Made by a program: the position numbers and the translations under genes. From positions 62,001 through 126,000 of the IMG/VR virus record IMGVR_UViG_3300042923_000601: a DNA stretch of 64,000 nucleotides; one strand, written 5' to 3'. Every line of letters begins with the position of its first letter. Position 1 is the first letter of the stretch. The notes under the pieces were generated by a model, which saw only the letters and a program-made list of their open reading frames with translations, was not told where the DNA came from and did no database searches. Of the stretch, positions 5,190 to 51,183 are shown piece after piece.

Positions 5190-5912
5190 TTACTTTTCAG
5201 TTGTGATTTTGGAAATTTGCTCTAACGTTTGTTGAATCGTTCGCTTTTCCAGCACAAACTGCATGTAATTCTGGTAGTTGACCTCAAGGCTATTCGTTGA
5301 ATACCGATATAAAATATAATCAGTCAATTTGTCCGACAGCTTGGCTGAGGCCGAATTACAAATATCAATAATCTCACGCGCTTCATCCGACAGCGTGGGA
5401 ATGGATGATATGCCGGATATCATATTTCCAACAGAATCTTTAAGGGCACGGTACTGTCTAAGGGCTCGATATCCTAAAACTGCACGGGAGGTTGCATCCA
5501 ATGGAAGCAATTCCCCAGCGGGCGGTTTAGGTTCTTCTTCTCCCTCTAGATCGGCGTCACCGTCCTCACTGCCGTCTCCTAATCCACCCCCTTCATCAGT
5601 ACCATCATCGGTTCCGTCTTGGGTTCCGTCATCTGTACCATCTCCTAAATCGTCTGAAGTGGCTGGGTCACTGTCAGTAGGATCAGCCTGACCTTCGTCA
5701 TCGGTCTGACCCGACACATCGGACCCATCACCACTCGCAGCATCATTGGAGTCTGAATCTGATGAATCAGTATCGGCACCATCAGGGTCGGTCTGATCAT
5801 CATCATTATCATCATTTGGTTGTTCTGAAGACAGGTCATACTTGTCCTCTGCCTCTAGCATGAGGCCGCCTTCTCGAATCATTCGGAGACTTTTTTGAAC
5901 ATCTATTCCCAT
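5190..5912 (-). CDS. Acidic internal head/scaffold-like protein
   Basis: Start MGIDVQ at 5912 with SD. N-terminal LRMIREG followed by MLEA. About 110 aa of D/G/S-rich low-complexity linker, then a helical C-terminal domain. Confidence 0.5.
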   Translation of the reverse strand: MGIDVQKSLRMIREGGLMLEAEDKYDLSSEQPNDDNDDDQTDPDGADTDSSDSDSNDAASGDGSDVSGQTDDEGQADPTDSDPATSDDLGDGTDDGTQDGTDDGTDEGGGLGDGSEDGDADLEGEEEPKPPAGELLPLDATSRAVLGYRALRQYRALKDSVGNMISGISSIPTLSDEAREIIDICNSASAKLSDKLTDYILYRYSTNSLEVNYQNYMQFVLEKRTIQQTLEQISKITTEK

Positions 5913-5925
5913 GAAGTATTCCTCC

Positions 5926-6963
5926 TTATCGCTGTGCAAGACCGAACGTTACCCGATCAATCGCACGAGAAACTTGGTTCTCGGTCCGCATCAGTTTATA
6001 TTTAGCATCCATGTCACCTTTGGACTCGGCGTCTTTAATCTTCTCCTGAAGAATCTGCTTCTCAAACTTCAGGTCAGCCAGTACAAGCTTCCGGTGTTTG
6101 TCTTGGGTGCGTTTATCCAGTGCAAACTTTGTCAAGACAGTAAGAACCGCAGTGACAATACCGACCGACACCCCGCCGGGTACAAGCAGTGCTACACCAG
6201 CACCTGTAAGGGACGCTGTAAGTAGTGTCTTTAGCATTGCGGACAGGTTAAAGGTCTCCTGTACGATCTTGTCGTAAGTTGCAACCCGTTTATTCTCCCG
6301 ATAATCTTGGAGGAACCGGTTGAACTTCTCGTTAAACCGGGTAGACACCTCACGGTCTTTCATTGTAAATCGAGTAACCTTGGTGGCAACGGCATCAACC
6401 GCTTTACGCATTCTAGCGCCCTCAAGTTGAACAGTCCCATCCGTTAACTCTTGGCACATTTCCAGCATAGCATCGACTACAGCCGCGAAATGAATGTCTG
6501 AATTGTTATCAAACATCATCTCAAGGTCTGAAGATTCAATGTCGCTAGGTGCTTTTTGAGTCATCATAGTAAGATGGGTCAGCACGATGTTGGCACACTC
6601 CACCCCGATATAAAGGGCTGGATGTGATGAACCTGCGGCTGCCATAAACTGCTTGATCTTAATGACTCCATTGTAGGCGAGTTGGTACTCAGCCGGGTCG
6701 ATGGTCTTAACAATCTCACCCAGACACTGAACAATGGGCTGTATGGTATCATACGCCTTATTTCGCACTGCGTGTTGAATCAGACAATTAGACAGGTCCA
6801 AATACTTGGTAAAGTTCCCATCGTAATCGTCAAAAATGGCGGTTACATCTTCAGGTGTAAGGATTTTCTTATCCTTGGAGTACGTATCGATGTATCCATT
6901 CAGTACAGCAATAGATTTTACCGATTCGAGCATCACAAGTGGAAGCCCAATAAATTGTGACAT
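5926..6963 (-). CDS. Probable internal head protein with hydrophobic hairpin (345 aa)
   Basis: GGGAGG SD, late promoter at 6995-7006, QLEG site, hydrophobic stretch LLTASLTGAGVALLVPGGVSVGIVTAVLTVL followed by a coiled-coil-like tail. Confidence 0.5.
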   Translation of the reverse strand: MSQFIGLPLVMLESVKSIAVLNGYIDTYSKDKKILTPEDVTAIFDDYDGNFTKYLDLSNCLIQHAVRNKAYDTIQPIVQCLGEIVKTIDPAEYQLAYNGVIKIKQFMAAAGSSHPALYIGVECANIVLTHLTMMTQKAPSDIESSDLEMMFDNNSDIHFAAVVDAMLEMCQELTDGTVQLEGARMRKAVDAVATKVTRFTMKDREVSTRFNEKFNRFLQDYRENKRVATYDKIVQETFNLSAMLKTLLTASLTGAGVALLVPGGVSVGIVTAVLTVLTKFALDKRTQDKHRKLVLADLKFEKQILQEKIKDAESKGDMDAKYKLMRTENQVSRAIDRVTFGLAQR

Positions 6964-6994
6964 GACTAAACCTCCCTGCTTTATTCATTGTAAT

Positions 6995-7006
6995 TATTGT
7001 GATGTT
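6995..7006 (-). promoter_or_regulatory. Late-type promoter AACA-N6-TA
   Basis: Minus strand reads AACA-TCACAA-TA upstream of 6963. Confidence 0.6.
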
Positions 7007-7076
7007 TCGAATATACCGGATAGTTCCCGAAGGGTGCGAACACCTTATAAACTATTCCTGTATAGGAGGATTCCCA

Positions 7077-7940
7077 ATGATTAAGACATCGCTCGCAACA
7101 ACGTTCCCGCTTTTCTATATTGTGGAGGCTGCAGTGAACCCTGATGATATTAAGACTACAATTATCAGGGAAAACACAGTCACCACGGCTGAAGGTGGGA
7201 CTATTAAGACCATAACTGCGGATGCTACTCTGCAGAGTTTCATGATGCTGAACTGGAATGGTCGTACCTACCCGGCTGCAGTTGTCATGGAAGGTATGGA
7301 TGGCAACCCAAAGATTCAGAATGATATTCGTCACAAGCAGTTTGCTGGTGAATGGGGTCATCCGGACTCCAAGGATATGGTTCGCCAGTCCCAAATCTTA
7401 CCGGAATACACATCCCACTACATCGATTCGTACCGCAGAGAAGGAAACCTGCTTAAAGGGCATGTCACTTCGGCTCCGTTCGGTCGTGGACTTTGGATGT
7501 ACAACACCATTATGGCAGGTCGCCCATGGGCATTCTCTCTTCGGGCATTCGGTGCAGTGGACTCTAACAACCAAGCTATCCGACCACTGACTGTCATTAC
7601 CTATGATCAAGTCAACCGCCCGTCCCACAAAGAAGCATATGCAACATCGGGTGACGTGGTGGGTGCTCAGTCGTACTCCGATTCCATGCTGAAAGAATGC
7701 TCCACTTCGATCATGCTGGAATCCAGTACAATCGTTACCGACATCACTAACTTCGTTCTTGAGAAGTCGGATAACGTTAAGATCGCCAAGGAACTGTTTG
7801 GCCTTCAAGAAAGCGCTGGCTTCTTTAACGGAAAAAATAACATCATCCTTGAAGGTAACTACCTGGGTAACTCCATCAAGGTAACTGTGCCTCTTGAAAG
7901 CTATGTACGTGATATCTACCGCGACATCCTTACGTTTTAA
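7077..7940 (+). CDS. Prohead protease, T4 gp21-like
   Basis: Start at 7077 (AGGAGG SD). Motifs NWNGRTYP, GEWGHP, SHYID and FSLRAFG match the gp21-type pattern NxNGRxYP / GELGHP / SH / SSRG. Confidence 0.85.
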   Translation: MIKTSLATTFPLFYIVEAAVNPDDIKTTIIRENTVTTAEGGTIKTITADATLQSFMMLNWNGRTYPAAVVMEGMDGNPKIQNDIRHKQFAGEWGHPDSKDMVRQSQILPEYTSHYIDSYRREGNLLKGHVTSAPFGRGLWMYNTIMAGRPWAFSLRAFGAVDSNNQAIRPLTVITYDQVNRPSHKEAYATSGDVVGAQSYSDSMLKECSTSIMLESSTIVTDITNFVLEKSDNVKIAKELFGLQESAGFFNGKNNIILEGNYLGNSIKVTVPLESYVRDIYRDILTF

Positions 7941-7952
7941 GGAGGGAATAGC

Positions 7953-8669
7953 ATGCAACTAAATACCATTCTGGACATCATCTTAAATCAACGACTTGGT
8001 GTTGTAGAGTATGGTATCGATGAACTTTATCCTGAAATTCATGCGAACCTGCTTAACAATACCCTGCCTATCTTCTCGCAGTATTTCCCTTGTGAGCGGA
8101 GATACAATTACGAGCCGGAGGATCACCCAACGGAAACCAAGTGGGAATACTATCTCAATATCCCGGAACTCAAAGAAGCTGGGCTTGAGATGATCTCTGT
8201 TGCAGAGGTACTCCCGCAATCAACCGTTATTGACTCCATCTATTATGACGGTAGACGGCCGGTTAATATGCGGATCGAGGATGTCATCATGAACTCCTTG
8301 GTTACCAATACTGCGTCGCTCGTCAAGGCCAGTTACAAGATGTTCCGGTTCATCCCACCTAACCGGATTAGCCTTCGGGGGTTTGGGACTAATAAACTTA
8401 GACTCACCCTCAAGATCAAGTACCCGAGCTTCTCTTCGATTGAAGATTCGGTTATTGAGCAGTTCCTCGACCTCGCTACAGCGGACATCAAGATTTTCTT
8501 GTATAACAAGCTGAAGCACTATGATCAGTTGACTCTGCCTATCGGTAACATTGACCTTAAACTTGATGAACTCTCGACTGGTAAAGACGACCGTAGAGAG
8601 GTTATCGACCGGTTTAATAGCAAAGGCTTCCCGAATAAGGCGATCTCGAACTACTACAAGTACGAATAA
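7953..8669 (+). CDS. Hypothetical structural protein (possible neck/head completion)
   Basis: 238-aa ORF with SD, co-transcribed with the protease. Function is inferred from context only. Confidence 0.4.
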   Translation: MQLNTILDIILNQRLGVVEYGIDELYPEIHANLLNNTLPIFSQYFPCERRYNYEPEDHPTETKWEYYLNIPELKEAGLEMISVAEVLPQSTVIDSIYYDGRRPVNMRIEDVIMNSLVTNTASLVKASYKMFRFIPPNRISLRGFGTNKLRLTLKIKYPSFSSIEDSVIEQFLDLATADIKIFLYNKLKHYDQLTLPIGNIDLKLDELSTGKDDRREVIDRFNSKGFPNKAISNYYKYE

Positions 8670-8679
8670 AAGCAAAAAA

Positions 8680-8710
8680 AATACACATGGCGAAATCCGC
8701 CATGTGTATT
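8680..8710. terminator. Bidirectional terminator between convergent genes
   Basis: 12-bp stem ATACACATGGCG/CGCCATGTGTAT with an A-tract on the left and T residues on the right. Confidence 0.7.
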
Positions 8711-8723
8711 TGTCGTTTAAACG

Positions 8724-17111: not shown

Positions 17112-19223
17112 TCACTTCTTCTTAGCAAGATATTCCGGCTTGAAGACCAGTCGGATATCCTTCTTGGACATGTGTGAGATGCTATCTACCACCTGATCCT
17201 TAACCGGAGTCAAATCGTTGAACTTGAACTTCAACTTAAGCCCACAGGTCAGGAATGTGGCATTAAACATGTCAACAACGCGAGAGTTATGGTTGTCCAT
17301 GTCAATTTCAAGGTCCTCTTTGAAGATGTCTACGTTAAGCAGACGGTTGAACTCGCGGCGACCTACGACCGATGTGCAATAGAGCCGGGTCATGTAGTTA
17401 ATCGCTGCTGGGTCATTACAGAGATCAAGAACGTCCATTTCCATATTACCAAGACGGATCGCCTGATTGTTAAACAGGGCTGTCCCTCTGCTATAGGCAT
17501 TGGACTTAATCGGCAGGAAGGTACGTGGATTGATTGTACCCTTCGATCTGGCTGAGAACTTTGTAATCGGTTCGTGCTTCAACCGGTATACATAGGTCGG
17601 AGCCACAATAACCTTACGCTGGATCGTTGAAGTCGTACCGTCTGGGTTCTTAAGGATCAAACGGGACTTCTTCGGATCAAACTTCTCAATCAACTTCTGA
17701 TAATTCTTAAAGCTGACGCTGTGTTCAGCCGATTGGAAGATGACGAAATCCTTTGTGATTTCAGCCAAGAACTGCTTGCGCTCATCGGCTTTCAGGGATT
17801 CATACATCCGTTCAACCTGCTTACCTTGCTTTGGATTAACCAGCGCGAGGAAGTCAAGAATCCCCTCGTACTTCTTCTTCGGAGATTCATCACTGTTCAG
17901 AATCTGATCCATAATCCAGTTTTCTTCGTGCTCACTCGACTGTGCAGGGTTGAGCCGCCCAACCATACTAAGCGCGTTGTATTCGATCTCAATATGCTTC
18001 CCAGTCTTCTTGTCGATAGGCATCATGTCGTCAGGGACGATCTCACTGATAACCCCCTTGTTACCAAACCGCCCAACCAGCTTAGAGCCTTGCTTCACTT
18101 TGGATGTGCTGGCTACTGTAATAACGATAATCATATTGTCGAACACTGAAGACATCTCCGTATTCCACCGGGTATGTTTACCGATACTCAAAGCATCCTT
18201 TGCACGAGCGTAATAGATACCCATCGTGTCGGAGTAGCTATTCTTCGGGTCAGATGATATCTCTTCGACTGTGTCACGAATCTCTCTCCAGAAATTTGTG
18301 ATCGAGTCCAGATACCAGTTTACCTGCTTGTGGGCAGCGTCAGTTGGAAGCTCATCGTGCGGGGTATTGCAATAGATGTCAATATCAACAACACGGGAGC
18401 ATGGGCTACTTTCTGTTACGTACGTTGTATCCCCGAACCTACGCTCTCTAAGGTTCTTATTCTTCAAACCGTAGAGGGCATTGCTATAATCCACACGCCG
18501 CCGTGCTACCAGAATTCGATCCTTTACCTTTTCACCGATATCAGGAAACGCTTTATACGACCCAGTGTTGCCGCCGTACAGGTTAAGGAAGATATCGTTA
18601 TTATTCTTAGGGATGGTAAACTGATCGACCGATGTTGTTTCTAGCTTAGTCCGCAGCGATTCCGAAATGCGAAGCGCATCCTCAACTAGAGCAACGTCGG
18701 ATAGATAGGCTGTTTCTGCATTCACGCCGAGGCGATAGTTCATATCGTCATCATATGCGTTCGATTTATACACAACATCGCCTTTCTTGATCGTAGAACC
18801 CACTTTCTTGGAGTCCATATACTCATTATTGATAAGAGTACCGCTAGATTCAGCGAAGGATTCCACTTCATTTCGAACGAGTAGGTCATATCGGTTGCTG
18901 TTCTTATCCTTTACGACAAGAACGTATACCATATCACTACCCTTGAACTTCTGAATCTTCTTCACAATCTCATAGTTCTTGTCTGCCTTCTGAAAAGAAG
19001 TTGACCGGTCGCCGTACATTTTCTCCCACCCTGTAGACATGCGGGCGATCTCCGGATTATTAAGATTCTTAGCCTGTGGTATTTGAGAATATACCATCGC
19101 GGCCCGAGATGAGTTAACGTGATTGGCAAGCGGTGTCATCAGTCCGCTACCATACACATAGTCCATGTTCTTGATGCCTGCAGCTATTCGGTGCAAGTCC
19201 TCCATCTGTTCGGGTTTAATCAT
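17112..19223 (-). CDS. RNA polymerase beta subunit, C-terminal part (probably non-virion RNAP)
   Basis: NHVNSSRAAMVYSQ, GSKLVGRFGNKGVIS, YRLKH, RLGNMEMDVL (RpoB DPBB and C-terminal motifs). Early promoter at 19293-19303. Confidence 0.92.
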   Translation of the reverse strand: MIKPEQMEDLHRIAAGIKNMDYVYGSGLMTPLANHVNSSRAAMVYSQIPQAKNLNNPEIARMSTGWEKMYGDRSTSFQKADKNYEIVKKIQKFKGSDMVYVLVVKDKNSNRYDLLVRNEVESFAESSGTLINNEYMDSKKVGSTIKKGDVVYKSNAYDDDMNYRLGVNAETAYLSDVALVEDALRISESLRTKLETTSVDQFTIPKNNNDIFLNLYGGNTGSYKAFPDIGEKVKDRILVARRRVDYSNALYGLKNKNLRERRFGDTTYVTESSPCSRVVDIDIYCNTPHDELPTDAAHKQVNWYLDSITNFWREIRDTVEEISSDPKNSYSDTMGIYYARAKDALSIGKHTRWNTEMSSVFDNMIIVITVASTSKVKQGSKLVGRFGNKGVISEIVPDDMMPIDKKTGKHIEIEYNALSMVGRLNPAQSSEHEENWIMDQILNSDESPKKKYEGILDFLALVNPKQGKQVERMYESLKADERKQFLAEITKDFVIFQSAEHSVSFKNYQKLIEKFDPKKSRLILKNPDGTTSTIQRKVIVAPTYVYRLKHEPITKFSARSKGTINPRTFLPIKSNAYSRGTALFNNQAIRLGNMEMDVLDLCNDPAAINYMTRLYCTSVVGRREFNRLLNVDIFKEDLEIDMDNHNSRVVDMFNATFLTCGLKLKFKFNDLTPVKDQVVDSISHMSKKDIRLVFKPEYLAKKK

Positions 19224-22529: not shown

Positions 22530-23732
22530 TTAAAATTCTTCCAAGAAAGTGTCGCCGGAACCGCGTTGATTCGAGGAACCATCGCCAGCAAAGGTCAACT
22601 TCTCGTTATTGCGTTTGATCTCAGGTAACCGATCTTTTTCCTTCTGGCTGGATTCTTCAGCGATGCGGGTTTCAATCTGTTTAAACCGTTCGACAGGAGC
22701 TGCCGTTCCAGTTACAATGATACCAAACTCCGGACCTTGCTTGATGCTGTCCGAGCGCTGTTGCAAATGCTTGAATACCAAGCCTTCACTCGGACGACCA
22801 ATAGTGTCCTGAATGTCATTGAAGGTGGTGTCGATTTGACGATACACGTCGTTATGAGTGCTCATAAAGATACCGTATGCCGATGGGTCTTTGGTAAATA
22901 CGGCGGTGCTGTTGTCGATAGCCGCTTTAACACGCGGTACCAGATCAACTGTTTCTTCTGCTACTGTAATATTCAATCTGTCGATAGTAACGACCGAGAG
23001 CAATCCTGAGAAAGATGTGAGACGTGCATAGTCTCTTCCGTCAATATTGCTTCTCGTGTTCTCCACGAAGTATTCTTTGGTGAGCAGGCGGATTGCATTG
23101 ACAGCGTCATGATTGACGGCTTCATATACATCATCACCTACTTTTCCTCTGACACGGTTGTTGTCAAATAGCATGTATGGCGCTCCTGCGGTCTTGGTTT
23201 CAAGATCGGACAGGAAGTCCCGCATGTTTTCTTGCGATTGGCGAGGCTCTTTCAAGCTACCAAGCAGTCCAACTGCGATAATTGTTTTATTAGGGAATTC
23301 ACGTTTAAGGAAGTTAGTGACCATGACAGATACGATCGTACCTGTACCGCCACCACCGGTTCCTACCACGTAGATGAGATCATGAGCGACCAGTTCCTGT
23401 GTCTTCTCATCTTCAAAGAAGCTTTTATAGTATTGCTTAAACTGAGTTGCTGAGAAGTTCCGGTCTTGCCCGGAGCCGTTGATTCCTGTAATGGCGAATT
23501 TGCCCAGTACATTCAGAGCCTTCATATCAGCCTCAGTTGTATTCAGTGCGATTGTATAGTAATCATATTCTGTCAGCAAGTGTGCTACGTTACCGCCGCC
23601 TGCACCTACTCCAATTACTCCTGCTAATTTCTTCGGCATGTTGCCTACCCCTCTCATCTGCTGAATTGCTTGACGTGCAGGTTGATTTTCTTTCAACCCT
23701 TCAAGTAAACGTTGCGAGGCTTCATTTGACAT
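22530..23732 (-). CDS. Tubulin/FtsZ-family GTPase (PhuZ/TubZ-like)
   Basis: GVGAGGGN (T1), GSGQDR (T3), GGGGTGT (T4), NIDGRD (T7). Start MSNE at 23732 with SD; early promoter at 23790-23800. Confidence 0.92.
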   Translation of the reverse strand: MSNEASQRLLEGLKENQPARQAIQQMRGVGNMPKKLAGVIGVGAGGGNVAHLLTEYDYYTIALNTTEADMKALNVLGKFAITGINGSGQDRNFSATQFKQYYKSFFEDEKTQELVAHDLIYVVGTGGGGTGTIVSVMVTNFLKREFPNKTIIAVGLLGSLKEPRQSQENMRDFLSDLETKTAGAPYMLFDNNRVRGKVGDDVYEAVNHDAVNAIRLLTKEYFVENTRSNIDGRDYARLTSFSGLLSVVTIDRLNITVAEETVDLVPRVKAAIDNSTAVFTKDPSAYGIFMSTHNDVYRQIDTTFNDIQDTIGRPSEGLVFKHLQQRSDSIKQGPEFGIIVTGTAAPVERFKQIETRIAEESSQKEKDRLPEIKRNNEKLTFAGDGSSNQRGSGDTFLEEF

Positions 23733-23887
23733 GAATAATTTCCTCCTAATAGTTCGAATTCTGACCAATTATGTATGGTCATACATCTCTATAATATATA
23801 AGTAATAAATCAATTGACGGTACGAACTCTCCGGCTAACTCTGCCGGAGAGCGACCTATTAGGAAGAGCCCTAAGACTCCTTTCTGA

Positions 23888-28089: not shown

Positions 28090-28125
28090 TACTTAGCTGT
28101 TTTGGCATCGTGAAACAGCTGATTA
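28090..28125. promoter_or_regulatory. Back-to-back divergent late promoters
   Basis: AACA-GCTAAG-TA on - (28101-28090) and AACA-GCTGAT-TA on + (28114-28125). Confidence 0.65.
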
Positions 28126-28147: not shown

Positions 28148-29569
28148 TTGGACGTTCAAGAGAAGCTAAAATTAATCAGGGAAGGGTCGTATACAGAAAG
28201 CCCGCAACAGGTTCTGAATGAGGCGTACTACGGCAAGAACCCTGATTTGCTGGAGTGCGAGAAGCTCATGGAATTAGCGGTATACACACCTGGCGGGGAC
28301 ATTCAGTCCCTACGAAAGGTTACCGCAATTATGAAAAAGCTCTTCAACTTCAGTGATTTTGTTATTATACCTATTGGGCTATCTGGTCCGGCAGCTACAA
28401 TACCGATCACGACGTATAAGTTTAAGTATATTGTATCCAGGCTCGAAATGGAGAAGTCTGCAACCGGAATCCAGTTTAAATCTGGAGACAAGGTACAAGC
28501 AGTTATCATGATCGGGTTAACTGACTTTAGAATATTCAATCTGACCGGGGAAGAGATGGTGTCACTTATTCTCCATGAAATTGGGCATTCTATGCGTATG
28601 ATTCTCCCATCTACTCAGATTATGAATGCGGTTGGGGCCGTTGGTTTTACAACCGCCATATGGCCAGCAATTGTGTTTAACTTCTTTGGTGGTGCAGCGG
28701 TCGCTGTTGGTGGAGTCGTTACGGATATTAGAGATGGGATCAATCAGCTCCTTGGAAGTGCATCCGCCAGTGTCCACGACGTTATTAAGAAATTTTCGTA
28801 TATCGGCGGTAATATCGCTTCGCACTTCATGATAATAAAAAGTACTATTGCCCAGTTCAAAAATGCATCATTTGTATCTGCACTCGGGTCAATGATTAAG
28901 AATGGGGCTAAGGCTACATTTGGGATTGTAGATAAGATTTCTCCATTTGGATTGGCACGGGCGTTAGCAGGATTCACATTTAACGCCGGTAAATTCAAAG
29001 AAGAGCTTCTTGCTGACTTTGTTGCTACTGCTTATGGGTACGGCCCAGCACTATCGAGCGGTCTCGGCAAACTAACAACCGGCATGCATGATATGGCATC
29101 TAGCCCAATCGTTCGATTATTGTCATTGCCAGCTAATTTAATCAATACGATCCTCGATCCACACCCTAATAACATTTCCAGAATGAAGAAAGTGATCGAG
29201 TCCCTTGAAACGGAGCTTAGTAAAGGCATCAATGAGAAGGAATTTAGTTTAATCAAGGAAGACTTGGAAGCAGCCAAAAAAGAACTGGCTAAGTACGAAG
29301 CTGAAGTTGGTAAACGTAAGTTGACCCAATTTGACTTCATTATCTTCCGCAAGGTTATGGGTAAATTGATCAAGGGTAACGATGATGTAAGGGCGTTGTT
29401 CTTCGGTCTCACACCTAAAGACCTCGCAATGATGGATGGTCTGGAAGAGCTTCCAGTTAAAACGAAAGACCCTCAGGATATGCAGGAGTCGATCCAGCTC
29501 ATTGAAGAGGCTGCTCATATCCCATATGCAAGACGCAATCAGCTTATTGGCCTCATCTGCGAGGATTAA
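28148..29569 (+). CDS. Virion-associated zincin-like metallopeptidase with hydrophobic central region
   Basis: TTG start after AAGGAG. HEIGH plus EELLAD (M48-like third ligand), Gly-rich hydrophobic segments, N-terminal LKLIREG..VLNEA. Confidence 0.65.
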   Translation: MDVQEKLKLIREGSYTESPQQVLNEAYYGKNPDLLECEKLMELAVYTPGGDIQSLRKVTAIMKKLFNFSDFVIIPIGLSGPAATIPITTYKFKYIVSRLEMEKSATGIQFKSGDKVQAVIMIGLTDFRIFNLTGEEMVSLILHEIGHSMRMILPSTQIMNAVGAVGFTTAIWPAIVFNFFGGAAVAVGGVVTDIRDGINQLLGSASASVHDVIKKFSYIGGNIASHFMIIKSTIAQFKNASFVSALGSMIKNGAKATFGIVDKISPFGLARALAGFTFNAGKFKEELLADFVATAYGYGPALSSGLGKLTTGMHDMASSPIVRLLSLPANLINTILDPHPNNISRMKKVIESLETELSKGINEKEFSLIKEDLEAAKKELAKYEAEVGKRKLTQFDFIIFRKVMGKLIKGNDDVRALFFGLTPKDLAMMDGLEELPVKTKDPQDMQESIQLIEEAAHIPYARRNQLIGLICED

Positions 29570-44518: not shown

Positions 44519-44622
44519 TATGACATCCTCCTAAAAGTATACGGTAATCTGTAGTTGGTACCAGAATCATTTGGTAGTTGGACATTAAAATATAACCTAT
44601 TAATAGAAAGGTGGCAATTCAA

Positions 44623-45279
44623 ATGGATGTTAAGGGAACGCTTAAATTAATTCAAGAAGGCGCTAGTATGGAGGAACTTCAAGAAGCCTCTGAACAGGAA
44701 GACCGCGATCTGATTACTGAAGCCGTTATGGACATCTTCATTTCCGAGACCAACTGCTCATTCCTGACGGAATCTGCTACGGGTGGTCTTGACCTCGTTG
44801 GTGTATTTAACGAGGCCGCATCCGATTCTCCGGGATTCTGGTCAAAATTAAAACAAAACCTTGGTTACCTTGTATCCTCGTTCGATCCATATGACGGTAT
44901 CCGTCAGCTTCGTTTGGTGAATGAGTTGATTAAGGATGACCAAGTTGAGGCTGCGGCTAATCGGACTGGCGATGTGTTTAAACATGATGACCCAACCACG
45001 AACAAGCAGCTTCTTGCAAATCAATTGATCTCTGCAACATCACTGGCTGTCACAGTATACTCTAAGGCTTCCAAGTATAAGAACTTCGACCCTGATCTGG
45101 CTAAGAAGTACATCAAGGAAGCTGAAATCTTCCATGACAAACTTGTTGATCTCCGCGATGCTGCTATCAAAGCAGGCAACAAGACCCTGGGCAAGCGTTA
45201 CAACCGCCAAGCGAACCGTCTGCATATCCATATCAACACCTTTGAGTCCCGTGCCATTAATAAAGCAAAATTTGTGTAG
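44623..45279 (+). CDS. Probable internal head protein with acidic propeptide
   Basis: MDVKGTLKLIQEG, then LQEA, ITEA, LTES and FNEA sites, followed by a basic helical region. Confidence 0.55.
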   Translation: MDVKGTLKLIQEGASMEELQEASEQEDRDLITEAVMDIFISETNCSFLTESATGGLDLVGVFNEAASDSPGFWSKLKQNLGYLVSSFDPYDGIRQLRLVNELIKDDQVEAAANRTGDVFKHDDPTTNKQLLANQLISATSLAVTVYSKASKYKNFDPDLAKKYIKEAEIFHDKLVDLRDAAIKAGNKTLGKRYNRQANRLHIHINTFESRAINKAKFV

Positions 45280-45325
45280 GCATGGTCGAACAGGTAAGTA
45301 ATCTATAAATAAGGAGGATTTACCC

Positions 45326-46015
45326 ATGGATAAACTGGAACAAATCAAAGCATTACTGACTGAATCAAGCGATGAAAGCGTAGCTGCTAAAATTAGAGCT
45401 ATTATGACTGAAGGCAGCAAAGAGGCTGATGAAGATACTGAGCCTGCGGATCACGAGGATGTTCTCCCGGATGAGCTGACAGATGCTGATGACCTCGAAA
45501 AACTGTTTGCCGAGGCGTCGTTCGATATTCTCGTTGCTGAAACCTCATTGAAGCCGCTGCAGGAATCCATTACTAATGGAGCAACACTGTCTGACCTTAT
45601 CACAGAAGCTGCTGCTGCAGACGGCGAACCTGGAAAGGTAAAAGCTGCGCTTGATAAAATCAAAGACAAGCTCAGATCGCTGGCTAACACTTCTGACCCT
45701 AACACTGCTATCAAAGAATTGCAGCTGGCTCGTCGTAGTCTGGCTGAAAACTTGGGCGTTTGGGGAGCTGCTGGCGCAAGTTTCTACTTCTTGGGCCCAC
45801 TTATCGGTTTATTCATGACTGTTATCGCCGCGAATATCGCAACCAAGTCGATCAGCCAGGACACCCTGAAAGCGTATATCGCTGAGGCCAAGGCGCTGCT
45901 CGCTACACTCGAAAAGGCAAAAGAAAAGGCCGATGTTAGTCAGGCTGCTGTGTTGACTAAGAAAATCAGCAAGCTTAAGAAGCTGATTAGCACACACGAA
46001 AGACGACTGAGATAA
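45326..46015 (+). CDS. Probable internal head protein with hydrophobic hairpin
   Basis: Acidic N-half with LTES, MTEG, LQES and ITEA; hydrophobic LGVWGAAGASFYFLGPLIGLFMTVIAA; basic tail. Confidence 0.55.
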   Translation: MDKLEQIKALLTESSDESVAAKIRAIMTEGSKEADEDTEPADHEDVLPDELTDADDLEKLFAEASFDILVAETSLKPLQESITNGATLSDLITEAAAADGEPGKVKAALDKIKDKLRSLANTSDPNTAIKELQLARRSLAENLGVWGAAGASFYFLGPLIGLFMTVIAANIATKSISQDTLKAYIAEAKALLATLEKAKEKADVSQAAVLTKKISKLKKLISTHERRLR

Positions 46016-46016
46016 T

Positions 46017-46054: not shown

Positions 46055-46100
46055 GTAAAACAGCTAATTAAAGTAAATCGAAATATAGGAGGGTATTCAT

Positions 46101-47051
46101 ATGGCACTTAAGCCCCTTAATCTAACGTCCCTGTATCGGTATGCAGAACAGGGCGGTGGTAAAGGTATCACAGATGTAGTCATGGCATATAGCCTTGGAA
46201 AAAACGGTACAATTCGTGTAGAAGGTGAAATGATCGAGGACGTTATGCGGGATATTACTTCTCGTACATCGCCATTCTTCGCTAAGTATGCGATCGAGCG
46301 CTTGGTCAAAAACGGAAAGATTCAGATCGTATATAACGATACGCTCAGACTCACCAATGCAGTTCTCTTCTTCCGTAAGCGCGAAGGGTCAAAAGAAGTT
46401 GTGGTGGTTAATATCACAAACTTCTCCTCCATGCGTCAGGACGGCACAATCAAGATTAACAGCAACGACTTCTATGCTATCCTGCTAACGGCGGCATTCT
46501 CCCTTACACTGGATAGCAGTATCATGTCCTATACCAGAGATGCATATGTAATGTATGCTAGACTCTTCACCAACGTGATCTCCAGTCTGGCGTCGTATAT
46601 GGACAACGTAAAAAAAGAAAAGATTCAATATCTCGCCACTAACTTCTTCCTTTATAATGTATATGGGCCGGACCGGGCTTTCGTTAACCCAATGAAATCA
46701 ACCCTTCGGTACAATAGCAAGGAAACGATGATGGCGCTTGAGACCAAGTTCCCTATGTACACAGAGAACTCAGCGTACGAAAGCTTGGAAACCTTTATTC
46801 AGGCTATCGCTACCGCTTTCCCTGAAATGAAGCAGCTTACGCTGAAGAACTTTGTCGATCGCTGGTGTAAGGCGTACGGTTCGGCTGCACTGTTTGCACC
46901 AGAACACATCCCGTACTTCTTCTTCATGATTATCGCTACGGCGTGCATGAGTGATACAATCAACGTGCGAAAGATTTCGACTGAAATCCAGACGAACCTG
47001 ACCGGGATGTACAAACGGATTGAGCAGCAGGTTGACGAATACGCCAATTAA
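46101..47051 (+). CDS. Hypothetical late protein (316 aa)
   Basis: SD and late promoter AACA-GCTAAT-TA at 46059-46070. Confidence 0.6.
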   Translation: MALKPLNLTSLYRYAEQGGGKGITDVVMAYSLGKNGTIRVEGEMIEDVMRDITSRTSPFFAKYAIERLVKNGKIQIVYNDTLRLTNAVLFFRKREGSKEVVVVNITNFSSMRQDGTIKINSNDFYAILLTAAFSLTLDSSIMSYTRDAYVMYARLFTNVISSLASYMDNVKKEKIQYLATNFFLYNVYGPDRAFVNPMKSTLRYNSKETMMALETKFPMYTENSAYESLETFIQAIATAFPEMKQLTLKNFVDRWCKAYGSAALFAPEHIPYFFFMIIATACMSDTINVRKISTEIQTNLTGMYKRIEQQVDEYAN

Positions 47052-47061
47052 ACAAAAAAAG

Positions 47062-47093: not shown

Positions 47094-47977
47094 ACTATGG
47101 CGGTTGCGTATGAGCTGATCGCTCTATATAAGGTATATGATTTCTCGTTCATAAACGCTGCAAAATATACGTTCATGCCGTTCTCATCCTCTGAATAGAA
47201 GTCAATCAGGTCATCAATAGACGTCGCCTGCTTAGTGGTATAAAATTCAGCATGATAGTATAAGTTCAGGGATTCCCCGTCTCTCTCTACAGGCACGGCT
47301 GAAGATGATGTTGCAGAATACAGCCCTTCATACTCCATATTGAATACGTTATCGTATGAAGTTTGCGGGCTGGTCAAAAAGGCTTTTAATCTCGACATCT
47401 CAGACAAACTGTACCCACTTAAAGTCACATCTCGGAAGTCCGCCCCTGTAAGGTAAGGGGCACGTATGCCAATAACGGTGTTTGTCTTTTTATCAACATA
47501 CAACTCTCCGATAGGAAGACTGTTGGTACGACCATACATGTTATAGCGATGCACGCCATATTCTTCGGCGATATCATTACTATAGCTCTTAGCAACTTCA
47601 AACTCGAATTCATCTCTAAGGGATGACACGTCAAACTTCGTCCCAACCAGAGTTTCCAGCGAGTTATAGCTTACTGCTCTTTTTTCATGCAGAAAGTTTG
47701 CGTTATCGTAGGAAGAAAAGATATTATTGACAGTGTACTTGGCTCCATTCTCGTCAGTATACTCAGATACTGTCGCTGGGGAGTATATCATGTCCTTCGT
47801 GGTATCAAATTTCTCTACATAGAAATGGGCTGCGTAAAGGAGTCCAATCAATATAGCGAATATAATGAATCCACCCATTAGCACCTTCCGACCTTTATCG
47901 TCACCTTTGCGTCGTCTATACGGCAGTTTGTCTTGTCCAAATACGGCTTTTTTGTCATATTTAATCATCTTAAACAT
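47084..47977 (-). CDS. Membrane-anchored extracellular protein
   Basis: Basic N-terminus, then TM VLMGGFIIFAILIGLLYAAHFY; start probably 47977 (GGAGG SD). Confidence 0.6.
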   Translation of the reverse strand: MFKMIKYDKKAVFGQDKLPYRRRKGDDKGRKVLMGGFIIFAILIGLLYAAHFYVEKFDTTKDMIYSPATVSEYTDENGAKYTVNNIFSSYDNANFLHEKRAVSYNSLETLVGTKFDVSSLRDEFEFEVAKSYSNDIAEEYGVHRYNMYGRTNSLPIGELYVDKKTNTVIGIRAPYLTGADFRDVTLSGYSLSEMSRLKAFLTSPQTSYDNVFNMEYEGLYSATSSSAVPVERDGESLNLYYHAEFYTTKQATSIDDLIDFYSEDENGMNVYFAAFMNEKSYTLYRAISSYATAIVNE

Positions 47978-48114
47978 TGTTCGGTCCTCCATTTCTAGAT
48001 GCAGCCTTAGGGTAGTGTGTTCTGGGTGACTATATATATTAAGTCCAGAACCTGTAAAAGTTTATTTATGCAAAAATAATAGGCTACCGGGATTTCTCCC
48101 AGCAGCCCATACTA

Positions 48115-49032
48115 TTACTTACCATACTTAGACGATGGAATGTCTAAAGCATCGTTACCATAGCTATCTTCTAAATAATACCCATAGGTATCAATCAGAT
48201 AGTCATTGATATAATACAGGCTGAAGTCTCCGATTGTATCCACGATCTCATATATAATGTCCAATTGATCGTGAGTCCGGAGGTACTCCAACACTTCAGC
48301 ATCAGCAGTTGCATTCAACCGGCTATACCCAATGTGCTGTGCCATTTGGGAAAGGTTACCCAGTGCATCAGCATCAATGAGAAGATTTGCTTTCTGTTCA
48401 GTTGTAAGTCCTTTCAGTTTAAATAGGTCAGCAATGGTGTTTACGAAGCCCAGAGTATCATACATATAGATTTTGAACTCGTCACTGGATACTTCCCACA
48501 GGGCATACAGATCAGCACCACTGATATTTGTAAATTCTCTTTCCATCGCAGCGTCTGTGAAATAAGCATACACTTTCAGCTTTTCCGTAGGGGCAAGGGC
48601 TTTCCAAGCTTCTTGTCTAGCTTCAAGCAAAGTGTAGTACCCAGAGAAATTCTTTTCAGACGGAGCGACAGTGTTATTTGCACGGAACGTAATGAGAGCC
48701 TTAGCTGCAGAATATACGTAAGTAAACTTAGCTCTTTCTTTAAGTGGTTTGGTGTTGTTGCTCTTATACAGAGCAATGATTAGATCATCGCGAAGAGTGT
48801 CCATATCCACAGTATAACCAACTGCAGTCTTCTTCGCATATACACCATACGGGTTCACCCCATAAGCAGCATCCGTTGCGGATGTCTTATGGTAAACCGG
48901 AAGTGGAGTGTCCTCAGCAGGAACGCTAATGAAATTGATTTGAGGACTAGCTTGTATTGTATCAACGGCTCCACCGAGTGTCAGCATGACAACTACTACC
49001 AATGTGATTAAACCTTTTACCCAGTTTCTCAT
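48115..49032 (-). CDS. Secreted protein with signal peptide
   Basis: MRNWVKGLITLVVVVMLTLGGAVDTIQA signal-like N-terminus; start at 49032 (AAGGAG SD). Confidence 0.6.
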   Translation of the reverse strand: MRNWVKGLITLVVVVMLTLGGAVDTIQASPQINFISVPAEDTPLPVYHKTSATDAAYGVNPYGVYAKKTAVGYTVDMDTLRDDLIIALYKSNNTKPLKERAKFTYVYSAAKALITFRANNTVAPSEKNFSGYYTLLEARQEAWKALAPTEKLKVYAYFTDAAMEREFTNISGADLYALWEVSSDEFKIYMYDTLGFVNTIADLFKLKGLTTEQKANLLIDADALGNLSQMAQHIGYSRLNATADAEVLEYLRTHDQLDIIYEIVDTIGDFSLYYINDYLIDTYGYYLEDSYGNDALDIPSSKYGK

Positions 49033-49233
49033 GTAAATCATCTCCTTAGATTAGTTTATGTATCCTTGTTCACGGCTATCATATTTACCTCAATTCCAAA
49101 GTGACAGGACGTTTTTACTATATATATTGATGTCTCACGTGTATCATATATAACCCTATATGGTGTAATTTACGGCTGGTTTAACTATATATGATACACG
49201 TGTAACAACACCAACTATTTAGGAGGAACTGTA

Positions 49234-49908
49234 ATGAGTCAACCTGTATTCGTAGCAAAGAAAGCCGACACCATGGTATACTTTCAAGGAATGAGTCGCC
49301 CGTACGAGATCGCACTTGTAAACTGGCTGACATGGCTAAAGGCCAATGCAAAAGATCGGTATACTCCAATCACTGGATATGAGAAAGTGATTAAGGGACT
49401 TGATAAGAACGACGACTGGGAGATGACTCCTTTTGATAAGGACGAAACCCATCGTCAAATGGATACTGTGTTATCCGAGTGTGAGTTTCTTCGGAATCGG
49501 TTATCTCCGCAGATCGGTATGATACAAGACACGATCAACGAAATATCTCGATATTACCAGTCCTTTGCTCGCCCTAGACGGTTCGGTGATAAGAAAGGAT
49601 ACGTTGAGAATATTATGCCTACAGAGGAGTTTGAACTCCCTACTCGTATCGTGAATAATCTTGTAACCATCTGTGATATCGCTAAACCTTCAATGGCTAA
49701 TATTGCTTCTAAGCGCTCTGCGTTCCTCGGGAAATATCAGGAACTCAGAAATCAGGTAGACGAGGTCGTAAAGTATCCTAGTTATGTATGGAATCTATAT
49801 GGTGAATTATACACTACGATAGAGAAAAACTTTGTAGCTACGGATATTGCCTTATTCGATTGTGAGGAGTTCCTTGAAATCATCCTTCCTGTCATGCTGA
49901 ATAAATAA
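49234..49908 (+). CDS. Hypothetical protein (224 aa)
   Basis: AGGAGG SD; terminator at 49916-49952. Confidence 0.6.
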   Translation: MSQPVFVAKKADTMVYFQGMSRPYEIALVNWLTWLKANAKDRYTPITGYEKVIKGLDKNDDWEMTPFDKDETHRQMDTVLSECEFLRNRLSPQIGMIQDTINEISRYYQSFARPRRFGDKKGYVENIMPTEEFELPTRIVNNLVTICDIAKPSMANIASKRSAFLGKYQELRNQVDEVVKYPSYVWNLYGELYTTIEKNFVATDIALFDCEEFLEIILPVMLNK

Positions 49909-49952
49909 ACGGATAAAGTAGACTCCCTTAACCAGGAGTCTACTTCTTTTTT

Positions 49953-50525
49953 CTACTCGATGTAGAGACAGCCTTCGTCTCCATCACCTGACGAGAGTTC
50001 TACAACCTTATACTTAATAGCATCAGCATATTTAGTCTTGAGTGCTGATACCAGGTCATCTATTATCCAGCTAAGGGATTCGTTGACCTCTTGAGAACCC
50101 TCAATAATTTCAATATAGTCTCCGTTGTCTACATACGTAATGGAATAGGAGTCCTTTTCTAGCCCATCCTCGGCTAAACTTTTCTTACACTTAGCCTTGA
50201 CACTGTCATCAGACTTTAATTTTTGTACCATCTTCCTTACGTCGGCTTTCATTTCATTGATGATACGATCTTTAGGGTTATTCTTGAGAAAAGTTTCTTT
50301 TTCTTCTTTGGAATAGCCTGAATGTTCCTTGGCGTATTGACTGTGTAGTTGTACCTTTCTATCTGAAGCTGCTTTATGGCTCTTACTGGCCGACCAAATG
50401 CTACCTAAAAGTAAAGCAGCTATGGCTGTCATACCAAGAATAGCTGATTCGTTAAGTTCCCGGTAATCTACCCCGTCAAAGGTATAACCTTCCTTAATAA
50501 GTTTAAGGGCTCTGTTTAGTTCCAT
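49953..50525 (-). CDS. Probable head-associated protein, paralog of 50539..51183
   Basis: Start MELNR at 50525; ALKLIKEG..ELNES followed by a TM-like segment. Confidence 0.6.
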   Translation of the reverse strand: MELNRALKLIKEGYTFDGVDYRELNESAILGMTAIAALLLGSIWSASKSHKAASDRKVQLHSQYAKEHSGYSKEEKETFLKNNPKDRIINEMKADVRKMVQKLKSDDSVKAKCKKSLAEDGLEKDSYSITYVDNGDYIEIIEGSQEVNESLSWIIDDLVSALKTKYADAIKYKVVELSSGDGDEGCLYIE

Positions 50526-50607
50526 ACCAGTATCACCCCTACTCGATGTAGAGACAGCCTTCGTCTCCATCACCTGACGAGAGTTCTACAACCTTATACT
50601 TAATAGC
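49953..50607. repeat. 69-bp identical direct repeat (49953-50021 and 50539-50607)
   Basis: The 3' ends of the two paralogous genes are identical nucleotide for nucleotide. Confidence 0.9.
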
Positions 50608-51183
50608 GTCAGCGTATTTGGCCTTGAGTGCAGCTTCAAAGTCTTTAATAAGCCAATGAAGGGCTGATTTTACCTCTTGATCACCTTTGATGATCTCAAT
50701 AAAGTCGCCTTCATCATTATAGGTAATAGAGAACTTACCATTCTCCAAATCCTTCTTTGCCAGTGTTTGTTTACACTTAGCCTGAATCTCGGTGTTCTTC
50801 TTGGCTTCTGCTACCATCTTCTTAAGGTCAGTTCTCATCTCAGCGTGTATCTTTTCTGCAGAATTGTTTTTCTTGAATGCTTCAATCTCTGCATCAGATA
50901 CTTTAGAATTAGAAGAATTGCCCGCTTTACGGTTTTTGTAGTCTTCTATGGCCTTACGTCTTGCTACCACTTCTTTATGCATAGGGTGTTTAGGGTTAGC
51001 TGCTATTCTGTCATCCGTCATTTTATCCAGCTTAGCAGCACCTGCAATCATCCCAAATAGTATGCCACCAACAACTGTTAATCCAGCTATTGATGCTACT
51101 ACAGACTCATTAAGCTGTCTATAGTCTACTCCATCCAGTGTATACCCTTCTCTAATAAGTTGTAATGCTGCGTGTAGTTCCAT
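50539..51183 (-). CDS. Probable head-associated protein, paralog of 49953..50525
   Basis: ALQLIREG..QLNES followed by a TM-like segment; identical C-terminus ELSSGDGDEGCLYIE. Confidence 0.6.
   Translation of the reverse strand: MELHAALQLIREGYTLDGVDYRQLNESVVASIAGLTVVGGILFGMIAGAAKLDKMTDDRIAANPKHPMHKEVVARRKAIEDYKNRKAGNSSNSKVSDAEIEAFKKNNSAEKIHAEMRTDLKKMVAEAKKNTEIQAKCKQTLAKKDLENGKFSITYNDEGDFIEIIKGDQEVKSALHWLIKDFEAALKAKYADAIKYKVVELSSGDGDEGCLYIE

What the first reader, a model, noticed from the sequence alone, without database searches (positions are those of the whole stretch)
5190..51183. Shared N-terminal LxLIxEG peptide on virion proteins: candidate capsid-targeting signal
Seen: five proteins begin almost identically: MGIDVQKSLRMIREG (5912), MDVQEKLKLIREG (28148), MDVKGTLKLIQEG (44623), MELNRALKLIKEG (50525) and MELHAALQLIREG (51183). 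MDKLEQIKALLTES (45326) is a weaker match. Apart from the 50525/51183 pair the rest of these proteins looks unrelated, and each motif is followed by [LIVMF]xE-[SAG] sites. Known: T4 internal proteins carry a short N-terminal capsid-targeting sequence removed by gp21. Inference: a portable head-import and processing tag in a Gram-positive jumbo phage, which could also be used for cargo loading.
Basis: partly seen in the sequence, partly recalled or inferred. Interest (0 to 1): 0.7.

Follow-up and report, generated by a model that had tools for sequence, protein, structure and literature searches.

The report
Shared N-terminal leader on phage head proteins
A 13-residue N-terminal peptide is shared by 7 to about 17 otherwise unrelated late proteins in each genome of an uncultivated jumbo-phage clade, and it looks like a new version of phage T4's cleavable "capsid targeting sequence", so the proteins loaded into the head could be predicted from the genome alone.

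Summary
The window lies in a 246.7-kb jumbo phage distantly related to Bacillus phage AR9. Seven proteins, five of them in the window, begin M-[DSN]-[IVL]-x-x-[KR]-L-[KRQ]-[LMF]-I-x-E-G, with the Leu 6-8 residues after the start. About 0.03 such matches are expected by chance.

Selection acts on the peptide, not the DNA. Three related IMG/VR genomes carry the tag on roughly 8-16 proteins each. About 20 diverged metagenomic homologues of one carrier family keep it.

The tag sits on at least 10 sequence families:
- the acidic scaffold-like protein beside the major capsid gene
- a zincin peptidase
- small membrane-segment proteins
- two paralogue families, of which the G family has an AR9 virion-protein homologue

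The tag ends in I-x-E|G. It opens a stretch about five-fold enriched in hydrophobic-x-Glu|[SAGT] sites with conserved Glu residues. That is the site type used by T4 gp21-family prohead proteases, and one is encoded next door. Tagged genes carry AR9-type late promoters.

Best reading: a clade-specific, cleavable capsid-targeting propeptide like T4's (confidence about 0.6). Cleavage and head location are inferred, because no proteomics exists. I classify it as a new variant of a known kind.

The parts
5190..5912 (-). Carrier A. A 240-aa very acidic protein directly upstream of the major capsid gene, scaffold-like by position and composition. The tag is at 5868-5912 and is followed by G-LMLE|AEDKYDL.
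   Evidence: Orthologues in G001-G003 all keep the tag and the LxLE|A..DKYD site. It is syntenic with AR9 g116.
28148..29569 (+). Carrier B. A 473-aa zincin (HEIGH) peptidase-like protein with a TTG start and one hydrophobic segment. The tag is at 28148-28186.
   Evidence: It is a homologue of AR9 g051, annotated 'zincin protease, M48'. Close homologues keep the tag, and distant ones have only a short leader before the conserved h-x-E-A-Y-Y-G-K.
44623..45279 (+). Carrier C. A 218-aa protein of the largest tagged paralogue family. The tag is at 44623-44661, followed by an acidic stretch of about 65 aa with four conserved h-x-E sites.
45326..46015 (+). Protein F. A paralogue of C with two degenerate tag-like units (IKALLTE|S and IRAIMTE|G), six h-x-E[SAGT] sites in its first 110 aa, and one hydrophobic segment.
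49953..50525 (-). Carrier D. A 190-aa protein with the tag at 50487-50525, then LNE|S directly before a membrane-like segment.
50539..51183 (-). Carrier E. A 214-aa protein, 50% identical to its paralogue D. The tag is at 51145-51183.
7077..7940 (+). Prohead (head maturation) serine protease, a distant member of the T4 gp21 (S77) / phiKZ gp175 (S80) family. It is the presumed enzyme that removes the tag. It carries its own N-terminal YIVE|AA site and C-terminal LQE|S and ILE|G sites.
3472..5112 (-). Major capsid protein precursor. The candidate maturation site LLEE|SAQQG lies just before the region conserved with AR9.
5926..6963 (-). A 345-aa head-module protein, first gene of the operon that continues into carrier A. 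It has no tag. It has an N-terminal LVMLE|S site and a membrane-like segment.
46101..47051 (+). Virion structural protein homologue immediately downstream of C and F.
   Evidence: PHROG 21032, 4e-20. AR9 g281 'virion protein', 6e-17.
28114..28125 (+). AR9-type late-promoter motif AACA-N6-TA, 34 nt upstream of carrier B. Equivalent motifs lie at 45289-45300 (+, F), 46059-46070 (+), 6995-7006 (-, operon with A) and 5157-5168 (-, MCP). One-off variants lie at 44581-44592 (+, C) and 51212-51222 (-, E).
   Evidence: The consensus is from PMC5312081.

Best explanation
The motif is the first 12-13 residues of a cleavable N-terminal propeptide that marks late proteins for incorporation into the assembling prohead. 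It is a functional counterpart of the T4 capsid targeting sequence (CTS).

Proposed mechanism:
1. The leader forms a three-turn amphipathic helix. Its hydrophobic face is made by positions -4, 0 and +3 relative to the conserved Leu, and the invariant Gly caps it.
2. This helix docks the carrier onto the scaffolding core while the shell closes. The scaffold-like protein carries the same leader.
3. The gp21-like prohead protease then cuts after the invariant Glu (I-x-E|G) and at the following hydrophobic-x-Glu|[SAGT] sites.
4. This frees the mature protein inside the head and breaks the leader into small peptides.

Shown: the motif, its fixed N-terminal position, selection at the protein level, conservation across the clade, presence on unrelated families, clustering and conservation of Glu sites, a gp21-family protease nearby, late-promoter motifs, and weak homology plus synteny of two carrier families to AR9 proteins annotated as virion proteins.

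Inferred: that cleavage happens, that it happens at these sites, that carriers are inside the head, and that the leader is what takes them there.
For: (1) Enrichment and position. There are 7 N-terminal matches in the genome against 0.028 expected.

(2) Protein-level selection.

(3) Conservation across the clade. I counted 42 tagged proteins in four genomes whose capsid proteins are 62-65% identical. E and G are invariant in 42/42, I in 41/42, and L/I in 42/42. In the C family, about 20 representatives below 50% mutual identity nearly all keep the tag. The least variable columns of that whole family are E12, E50, M1, G13, then E33, E64, L7 and I10. These are the tag plus the P1 Glu of four h-x-E sites.

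(4) Portability. There are at least 10 sequence families. Tagged and untagged paralogues coexist. Zincin homologues at 38-64% identity keep the tag, while those at about 25% identity, and AR9 g051, lack it.

(5) Cleavage logic. Site density is five-fold higher in the 80 aa after the tag. The capsid protein has the same site type at its presumed maturation point: LLEE|S here, MLTE|A in G003, ILQE|S in AR9.

(6) The protease. It matches PHROG head maturation protease at 4e-12, and Pfam S77 and S80 below their cut-offs. Its family profile finds T4 gp21 (5jbl) as the best PDB hit at E = 6e-4. His95, Ser154 and His184 are invariant. T4 and phiKZ-type prohead proteases cut after Glu (PMC9026906).

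(7) Head and virion links. Carrier A lies between the protease and the capsid gene. The G family hits AR9 virion protein g216 (HMM 2e-5), and its untagged paralogues sit beside g214/g215 homologues. H hits AR9 virion protein g153 (9e-4) and sits beside the same RNAP gene. C and F precede a homologue of AR9 virion protein g281.

(8) Timing. AR9-type late promoters lie upstream of B, H, F, the A operon and structural genes. Early-type TATATATTATA lies upstream of 27 other genes, none of them tagged.

(9) Structure. AlphaFold2 puts the tag in an isolated helix at residues 3-11. In B a disordered linker follows.
Against: - No virion proteome or N-terminal data exist for this clade, which is known only from metagenomes.
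- AR9 g051, the homologue of carrier B, is not annotated as a virion protein.
- The scaffold-like protein itself carries the tag, which is not how the T4 CTS is described.
- At least six other proteins with clustered h-x-E sites have no tag, so the tag is not required to be a substrate.
- Virion RNA polymerase subunits, which must be packaged, lack the tag in G001-G003. In this genome one has only a degenerate copy with Ala in place of Glu.
- The tag pattern is absent from cultured relatives AR9 and Listeria phage LPJP1.
- The links to AR9 virion proteins are weak (E = 2e-5 and 9e-4 against a 304-protein database) and lean on synteny.
- The counts of tagged proteins include paralogues, which are not independent.
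Confidence: 0.6

Rival explanations
1. The leader is only a processing module. It serves as a recognition element or pro-segment for the prohead protease, for example keeping the zincin or the membrane-active proteins inert until maturation. It has no role in getting the protein into the head.
For: The most conserved positions are those expected of a cleavage site (I at P3, E at P1, G at P1') and the following Glu sites. Untagged proteins with similar site clusters exist. The protease's own termini carry such sites.
Against: A cleavage site alone needs about 3-4 residues. Here conservation extends 10 residues upstream with helical periodicity and a fixed distance from Met1. In T4 the same short peptide does both jobs, with distinct residues for each (PMC9026906). 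A prohead protease acts inside the prohead, so substrates must get there in any case.
Confidence: 0.17
2. The leader sends proteins to another place or partner. Candidates are the cell membrane, a replication or assembly compartment organised by the PhuZ-like tubulin, or a phage or host chaperone such as the GroEL homologue.
For: B, D, E and F have a membrane-like segment. The genome encodes a PhuZ-like protein and a GroEL homologue. The T4 capsid protein N-terminus is reported to direct it to GroEL (reference listed in PMC10052503).
Against: The leader is charged and amphipathic with no signal-peptide core. A, C, G and H have no hydrophobic segment. The tag is on the scaffold-like protein in all four genomes and is followed by protease-type sites. 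Nothing links it to the tubulin.
Confidence: 0.1
3. The shared N-terminus has no function of its own. It reflects common descent of the 5' gene ends, repeated recombination of a start-region cassette, or a constraint on translation initiation.
For: Much of the count comes from paralogue expansions (family 0 has 26 members). All carriers have similar strong ribosome-binding sites.
Against: Third codon positions vary freely and upstream DNA is unrelated. Genomes of 34-45% GC keep the same peptide. The tag stays conserved while the rest of the protein falls to about 25-30% identity. The tag is on families whose distant homologues lack it.
Confidence: 0.04

Closest known systems
Capsid targeting sequence (CTS) of phage T4 internal proteins IPI, IPII, IPIII and Alt (Mullaney & Black 1996, as reviewed in PMC9026906 and PMC7411985)
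   Same: Both are short N-terminal peptides of about 10-20 aa shared by otherwise dissimilar proteins. Both end in hydrophobic-x-Glu and are removed by a gp21-family prohead protease. In both, the N-terminal part would serve targeting and the last residues processing. Both are portable between proteins.
   Different: - I recognise no sequence similarity to the T4 peptide.
- The phage lineage is different: AR9-related, with multisubunit RNA polymerases.
- There are far more carriers per genome (7 to about 17).
- The leader is also on the scaffold-like protein, on a zincin and on proteins with membrane segments.
- An invariant Gly follows the Glu.
- The leader opens a longer multi-site propeptide instead of being the whole propeptide.
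- Function is untested here.
N-terminal propeptides of head and ejection proteins in phiKZ, 201phi2-1 and SPN3US, cut by S80 proteases gp175/gp245 (PMC10052503, PMC7411985, PMC9026906)
   Same: Both involve giant phages with a diverged gp21-like protease. In both, many head proteins lose N-terminal propeptides, cleavage is after Glu, there are several redundant sites per propeptide, and a targeting role has been proposed for a propeptide (SPN3US gp47).
   Different: Those propeptides are mostly long (111-254 aa in SPN3US), and the papers read here do not report a shared leader for them. Their site motif is small-x-Glu, not hydrophobic-x-Glu. Here a stereotyped 13-aa leader is common to many families.
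Cargo-loading (targeting) peptides of encapsulins (own knowledge, not tested here)
   Same: Both are short conserved terminal peptides on diverse cargo proteins that direct them into an HK97-fold shell.
   Different: The encapsulin peptide is usually C-terminal, is not cleaved, and binds the shell protein directly. Here the binding partner is unknown, and the one complex prediction that included the capsid protein gave no answer.
Short N-terminal leaders of AR9, LPJP1 and a more distant metagenomic clade
   Same: The superclade is the same. Head-module and virion proteins begin with 8-20 residues ending in three hydrophobic residues and Glu, for example LLLE|S, FLIIE|S, YIIME|S. One distant contig has five tandem genes sharing a different 20-aa leader ending CLME|AA.
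   Different: These leaders are loose or restricted to tandem paralogues. The L-[KRQ]-[LMF]-I-x-E-G form is absent from AR9 and LPJP1.

Membership tests
T4-type capsid targeting sequence | Located at the extreme N-terminus and about 10-20 residues long | tested here: met
   The conserved Leu lies 6-8 residues after Met1 in all 42 carriers, and the leader is 12-14 aa long.
T4-type capsid targeting sequence | Shared by proteins that are otherwise dissimilar | tested here: met
   There are at least 10 BLAST families. A, B, C, D/E, G and H have no similarity beyond the tag.
T4-type capsid targeting sequence | Ends in the prohead protease's site (hydrophobic-x-Glu) | tested here: met
   I-x-E is invariant or nearly so. 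This is shown at sequence level only.
T4-type capsid targeting sequence | The phage encodes a gp21-family prohead protease | tested here: met
   The protein at window 7077-7940 matches PHROG head maturation protease at 4e-12. Its profile hits T4 gp21 (5jbl) at 6e-4. Pfam S77 and S80 matches are below cut-off for this protein but on record for close homologues.
T4-type capsid targeting sequence | Sequence related to the T4 IP leader | not tested
   No T4 sequence was fetched. From memory the peptides are not alike. Membership is claimed by mechanism, not by homology.
T4-type capsid targeting sequence | Carriers are found inside the head, with the leader removed | not testable with these tools
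   There is only indirect support: late promoters, head-module position, and weak homology plus synteny to AR9 virion proteins g153, g216 and g281.
T4-type capsid targeting sequence | The leader is sufficient to load a foreign protein | not testable with these tools
   This needs an experiment.
Substrates of S77/S80 prohead proteases (multi-site propeptides) | Several cleavage-type sites with Glu at P1 clustered in the N-terminal region | tested here: met
   There are 2.65 sites per 100 aa in that region against 0.43-0.58 elsewhere. Conserved E12, E33, E50 and E64 occur in the C family.
Substrates of S77/S80 prohead proteases (multi-site propeptides) | Cleavage observed | not testable with these tools
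   No proteomic data exist for this clade.
Sec/Tat-type signal peptide | Hydrophobic core after a short charged N-region | tested here: not met
   The leader is amphipathic and charged. A, C, G and H have no hydrophobic window at all.
Encapsulin cargo-loading peptide | Binds the HK97-fold shell protein | tested here: inconclusive
   The complex prediction with capsid protein, protease and a 40-aa tagged peptide scored 0.01, verdict 'no answer'.

The most novel reading that the evidence does not exclude
The leader is a self-recognising assembly handle. Because the scaffold-like protein carries the same amphipathic helix as the cargo, cargo would enter the head by co-assembling helix-to-helix with the scaffold core. 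This differs from binding a separate receptor site, and the protease would then dissolve the whole lattice at the shared E|G. Any late protein that acquires these 13 residues would become head cargo. That would explain the rapid expansion to about 17 carriers in one genome, and the degenerate non-cleavable copy (Ala for Glu) on this phage's virion RNA polymerase subunit. The full set of packaged or ejected proteins of uncultivated phages could then be read from sequence, and the tag could be reused as a cargo-loading tag.
Probability: 0.2. Interest if true: 0.75.

Novelty: new variant of a known kind. Interest (0 to 1): 0.58.

Why it matters
Apart from T4's 10-residue CTS, the papers read here describe no short, portable signal that puts proteins inside a tailed-phage head.

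A second, unrelated, sequence-recognisable leader in a different giant-phage lineage would have three consequences:
- It would suggest that short cleavable N-terminal targeting peptides are a general solution, not a T4 peculiarity.
- It would let the internal or ejected protein set be predicted directly from metagenomic genomes. Here that set includes a zincin peptidase, small membrane-segment proteins and large paralogue families, which are likely early-acting or host-directed factors.
- It would offer a compact tag for loading cargo into large capsids of phages whose nearest cultured relatives infect Gram-positive bacteria.

If the tag proves to be only a protease site, the result is still a useful marker of prohead-protease substrates in this clade.

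Tried and rejected
- Pfam and PHROG scans of all carriers gave nothing informative beyond the zincin motif.
- A megablast of 8 kb of the window against the phage collection found no match.
- A search of this genome with Pfam PF03420 found no hit. The protease was found through AR9 g114 instead.
- The complex prediction used the protease catalytic region, the capsid protein and the first 40 residues of carrier A. It scored 0.01, verdict 'no answer', and counts neither for nor against binding.
- The AlphaFold2 model of B against PDB gave no significant match, only weak M48 peptidase rows (BepA, ZMPSTE24) with E > 0.1.
- The AlphaFold2 model of C against BFVD gave nothing significant.
- HMM and phmmer searches of families 0, 1 and 4 against the AR9 proteome gave no hits.
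- 'ATTAATA' as a shared promoter was replaced by the AR9 late consensus.
- Two further IMG/VR pattern hits (G004, G005) are internal chance matches in unrelated contigs.
- A DNA-level repeat or regulatory element was rejected on codon evidence.
- Literature searches found no description of this motif.

Full report
**What the window is.** The window is bases 62,001-126,000 of a single 246,689-bp IMG/VR virus contig with 44.6% GC. It encodes the following:
- a large terminase (24-2195, minus strand)
- a major capsid protein (3472-5112, minus strand)
- subunits of multisubunit RNA polymerases
- a PhuZ-like tubulin
- topoisomerase II, helicases and a DNA ligase

The capsid protein's nearest named relatives are Listeria phage LPJP1, Bacillus phages AR9 and PBS1, the Staphylococcus jumbo phages and Yersinia phage phiR1-37. 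All are at only 23-26% identity. Gene order around the capsid gene matches AR9 g112-g121. AGGAGG-type ribosome-binding sites are strongly enriched upstream of genes. The phage is therefore a distant, uncultivated relative of the AR9 group. A Gram-positive host is plausible but not shown.

**The observation.** The one at 28148 is on the plus strand and starts with TTG.

A six-frame scan of the genome for L..I.EG finds seven matches that sit 6-8 residues after a start codon with a good ribosome-binding site. Five are in the window. The other two are P0008 at genome 197259+ and P0009 at genome 48155-. There is only one other in-ORF match. Chance predicts 0.028 such N-terminal matches (P = 2.5e-15).

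At the invariant residues, codon positions 1-2 are 96% identical between copies and position 3 is 52% identical. The upstream DNA is unrelated. The peptide is what is conserved, not the DNA.

**Conservation.** A degenerate DNA pattern for the tag and a capsid-protein search recovered three related IMG/VR genomes. These are G001 (215.8 kb), G002 (207.0 kb) and G003 (246.9 kb), with 34-41% GC and capsid proteins 62-65% identical to this one. They carry the tag on roughly 8 to 16 proteins each, always at the N-terminus.

Over the 42 carriers in the four genomes the consensus is M-[DSN]-[IVL]-x-x-[KR]-L-[KRQ]-[LMF]-I-x-E-G. E and G are invariant, I is present in 41 of 42, and L or I in 42 of 42. 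The hydrophobic positions are spaced i, i+4, i+7. AlphaFold2 places the tag in an isolated helix at residues 3-11, which in B is followed by a disordered linker.

A profile search of 1.84 billion representatives with the C family found about 20 short members below 50% mutual identity. Nearly all keep the tag. In their alignment the mean column identity is 30%. The least variable columns are E12 and E50, then M1, G13, P89 and E166, then L96, L200, E33, A167 and E64, then L7 and I10. Apart from P89, L96, E166, A167 and L200 in the mature domain, these are the tag plus the Glu of three further hydrophobic-x-Glu sites.

**Who carries it.** The carriers fall into at least ten BLAST families.
- **A** (5190-5912, minus strand) is a very acidic 240-aa protein between a 345-aa head-module protein and the capsid gene, so it is scaffold-like by position and composition. 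All four genomes keep the tag on it, followed by LxLE|A..DKYD.
- **B** (28148-29569) is a zincin with invariant HExxH and is homologous to AR9 g051. Homologues at 38-64% identity keep the tag. Homologues at about 25% identity, and AR9 g051, have only a short leader. All then begin the conserved domain with h-x-E-A-Y-Y-G-K.
- **C and F** (44623-46015) belong to a 26-member family whose 730-790-aa members lack the tag. F has two degenerate tag units.
- **D and E** (49953-51183) are paralogues with LNE|S just before a membrane-like segment.
- **G**, outside the window, belongs to a family whose untagged paralogues sit next to homologues of AR9 virion proteins g214 and g215. The family HMM hits AR9 virion protein g216 at 2e-5.
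- **H**, outside the window, weakly matches AR9 virion protein g153 (9e-4). It lies next to the same non-virion RNA polymerase gene as g153 does.
- C and F precede a homologue of AR9 virion protein g281.

Tag presence is therefore independent of protein family, which is what 'portable' means.

**Processing logic.** The tag ends in I-x-E|G. The 80 residues after it contain 2.65 [LIVMF]-x-E-[SAGT] sites per 100 aa. The rest of the same proteins has 0.43, and other proteins have 0.54-0.58. The Poisson P is 1e-31, inflated by paralogy.

The capsid protein has the same site type exactly where similarity to AR9 begins: LLEE|S here, MLTE|A in G003, ILQE|S in AR9.

A prohead protease lies 1.1 kb from carrier A, at 7077-7940.
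- It matches PHROG head-maturation protease at 4e-12, and Pfam S77 (T4 gp21) and S80 (phiKZ gp175) below their cut-offs.
- Close homologues have those Pfam hits on record.
- Its family profile finds T4 gp21 (5jbl) as the best PDB match at E = 6e-4.
- His95, Ser154 and His184 are invariant in 32 homologues. The protease's own termini carry YIVE|AA, LQE|S and ILE|G.

T4 gp21 and the phiKZ and SPN3US enzymes all cut after Glu (PMC9026906). The T4 CTS comprises the first 10 residues of IPIII, with targeting residues at positions 4 and 7 and processing residues at 8 and 10 (same source).

**Timing.** AR9 late promoters have the consensus AACA-N6-TA and early promoters AAATATATATTAT-N6-G (PMC5312081). 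In this genome AACA-N6-TA lies 27-75 nt upstream of 27 genes, where about 4 are expected. These include carriers B and H, protein F, the operon that holds A, the capsid gene and several virion-protein homologues. C and G have GACA-N6-TA, and E has AACA-N5-TA. D follows E in an operon. TATATATTATA precedes 27 other genes, mostly replication and transcription genes, and none of them is tagged.

**Limits and counter-evidence.**
- No proteomic data exist, and the clade is known only from metagenomes.
- AR9 g051 is not annotated as a virion protein.
- At least six proteins with clustered sites have no tag, so the tag is not needed to be a substrate.
- Virion RNA polymerase subunits lack it. The exception is a degenerate copy (LRAIQAG, Ala for Glu) on this genome's beta subunit, which is absent from the orthologues.
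- The tag pattern is absent from AR9 and LPJP1. These instead have loose leaders ending in three hydrophobic residues and Glu.
- A more distant clade, with protease 40-50% identical, has a different shared 20-aa leader on five tandem genes. Its scaffold-like protein keeps only the second site (VLAE|D, VLTE|A).
- The complex prediction gave no answer, and the fold searches were uninformative.

**Conclusion.** The shared peptide is real, selected and portable. It is most simply explained as a clade-specific, cleavable capsid-targeting leader that works like the T4 CTS, with overall confidence about 0.6. I am more confident that it is a prohead-protease propeptide than that it is the targeting element. 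It is not a homologue of the T4 peptide as far as I can tell, and it differs in carrier range and in being present on the scaffold-like protein. I classify it as a new variant of a known kind.

Noticed in passing
window 17112-19223 (upstream region) and 26 other genes genome-wide; late motifs e.g. window 28114-28125: The genome appears to use AR9-like promoters. TATATATTATA-N5-6-TG lies in front of 27 genes, including RNA polymerase, PhuZ-like and replication genes. AACA-N6-TA lies in front of 27 mostly structural genes. This suggests the AR9 two-polymerase transcription scheme is conserved at 25% capsid identity.
   Followed up: partly
genome 168847-173130 (-), i.e. window coordinates 106847-111130, outside the window: The 1427-aa homologue of the AR9 virion RNA polymerase beta subunit has an N-terminal extension of about 40 aa. 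It begins MNNLQDQLRAIQAG, a tag look-alike with Ala instead of the invariant Glu. The orthologues in G001-G003 lack the extension. It may be a non-cleavable or decaying tag.
   Followed up: partly
L066:17605-20448 (metagenomic contig ERZ28656477 scaffold_918): Five tandem genes in a more distant clade share a different 20-residue N-terminus (MININDYNREDLIASCLME|AA) ahead of divergent bodies. This may be a second, independent leader family in the same superclade.
   Followed up: no
window 2208-3401 (-): A 397-aa protein between the capsid and terminase genes has an HDISH motif. It is syntenic with AR9 g118 'zincin protease', which is PBS1 gene 4, annotated 'capsid maturation protease'. Sequence similarity to g118 is marginal. 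Its role relative to the serine protease is unclear.
   Followed up: no
window 22530-23768 (-): A PhuZ-like tubulin hit (PHROG 4733, 8e-6) with an early-type promoter. I did not check whether this clade builds a nucleus-like compartment.
   Followed up: no
window 62319-64000 (+), continuing to genome 136330; also genome 174303-184685: Two giant ORFs of 4003 and 3460 aa. The second has an AACA-N6-TA motif and is conserved at its N-terminal end in G001-G003. Their functions were not examined.
   Followed up: no
window 24-2195 (-): The large terminase is one uninterrupted ORF here. In the AR9 record, the homologue g121 is annotated as joined from five pieces.
   Followed up: no
genome ~161802 (-), i.e. 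window coordinate ~99802, outside the window: This is the only non-N-terminal in-ORF match to L..I.EG (EALRNIKEGRQD). It lies about 20 codons before a stop in a roughly 217-codon frame. It is probably chance.
   Followed up: no
genome 214513-215472 (+) and 217906-218874 (+), outside the window: Two untagged proteins of about 320 aa have five h-x-E[SAGT] sites in their first 110 residues. They are candidate additional prohead-protease substrates.
   Followed up: no
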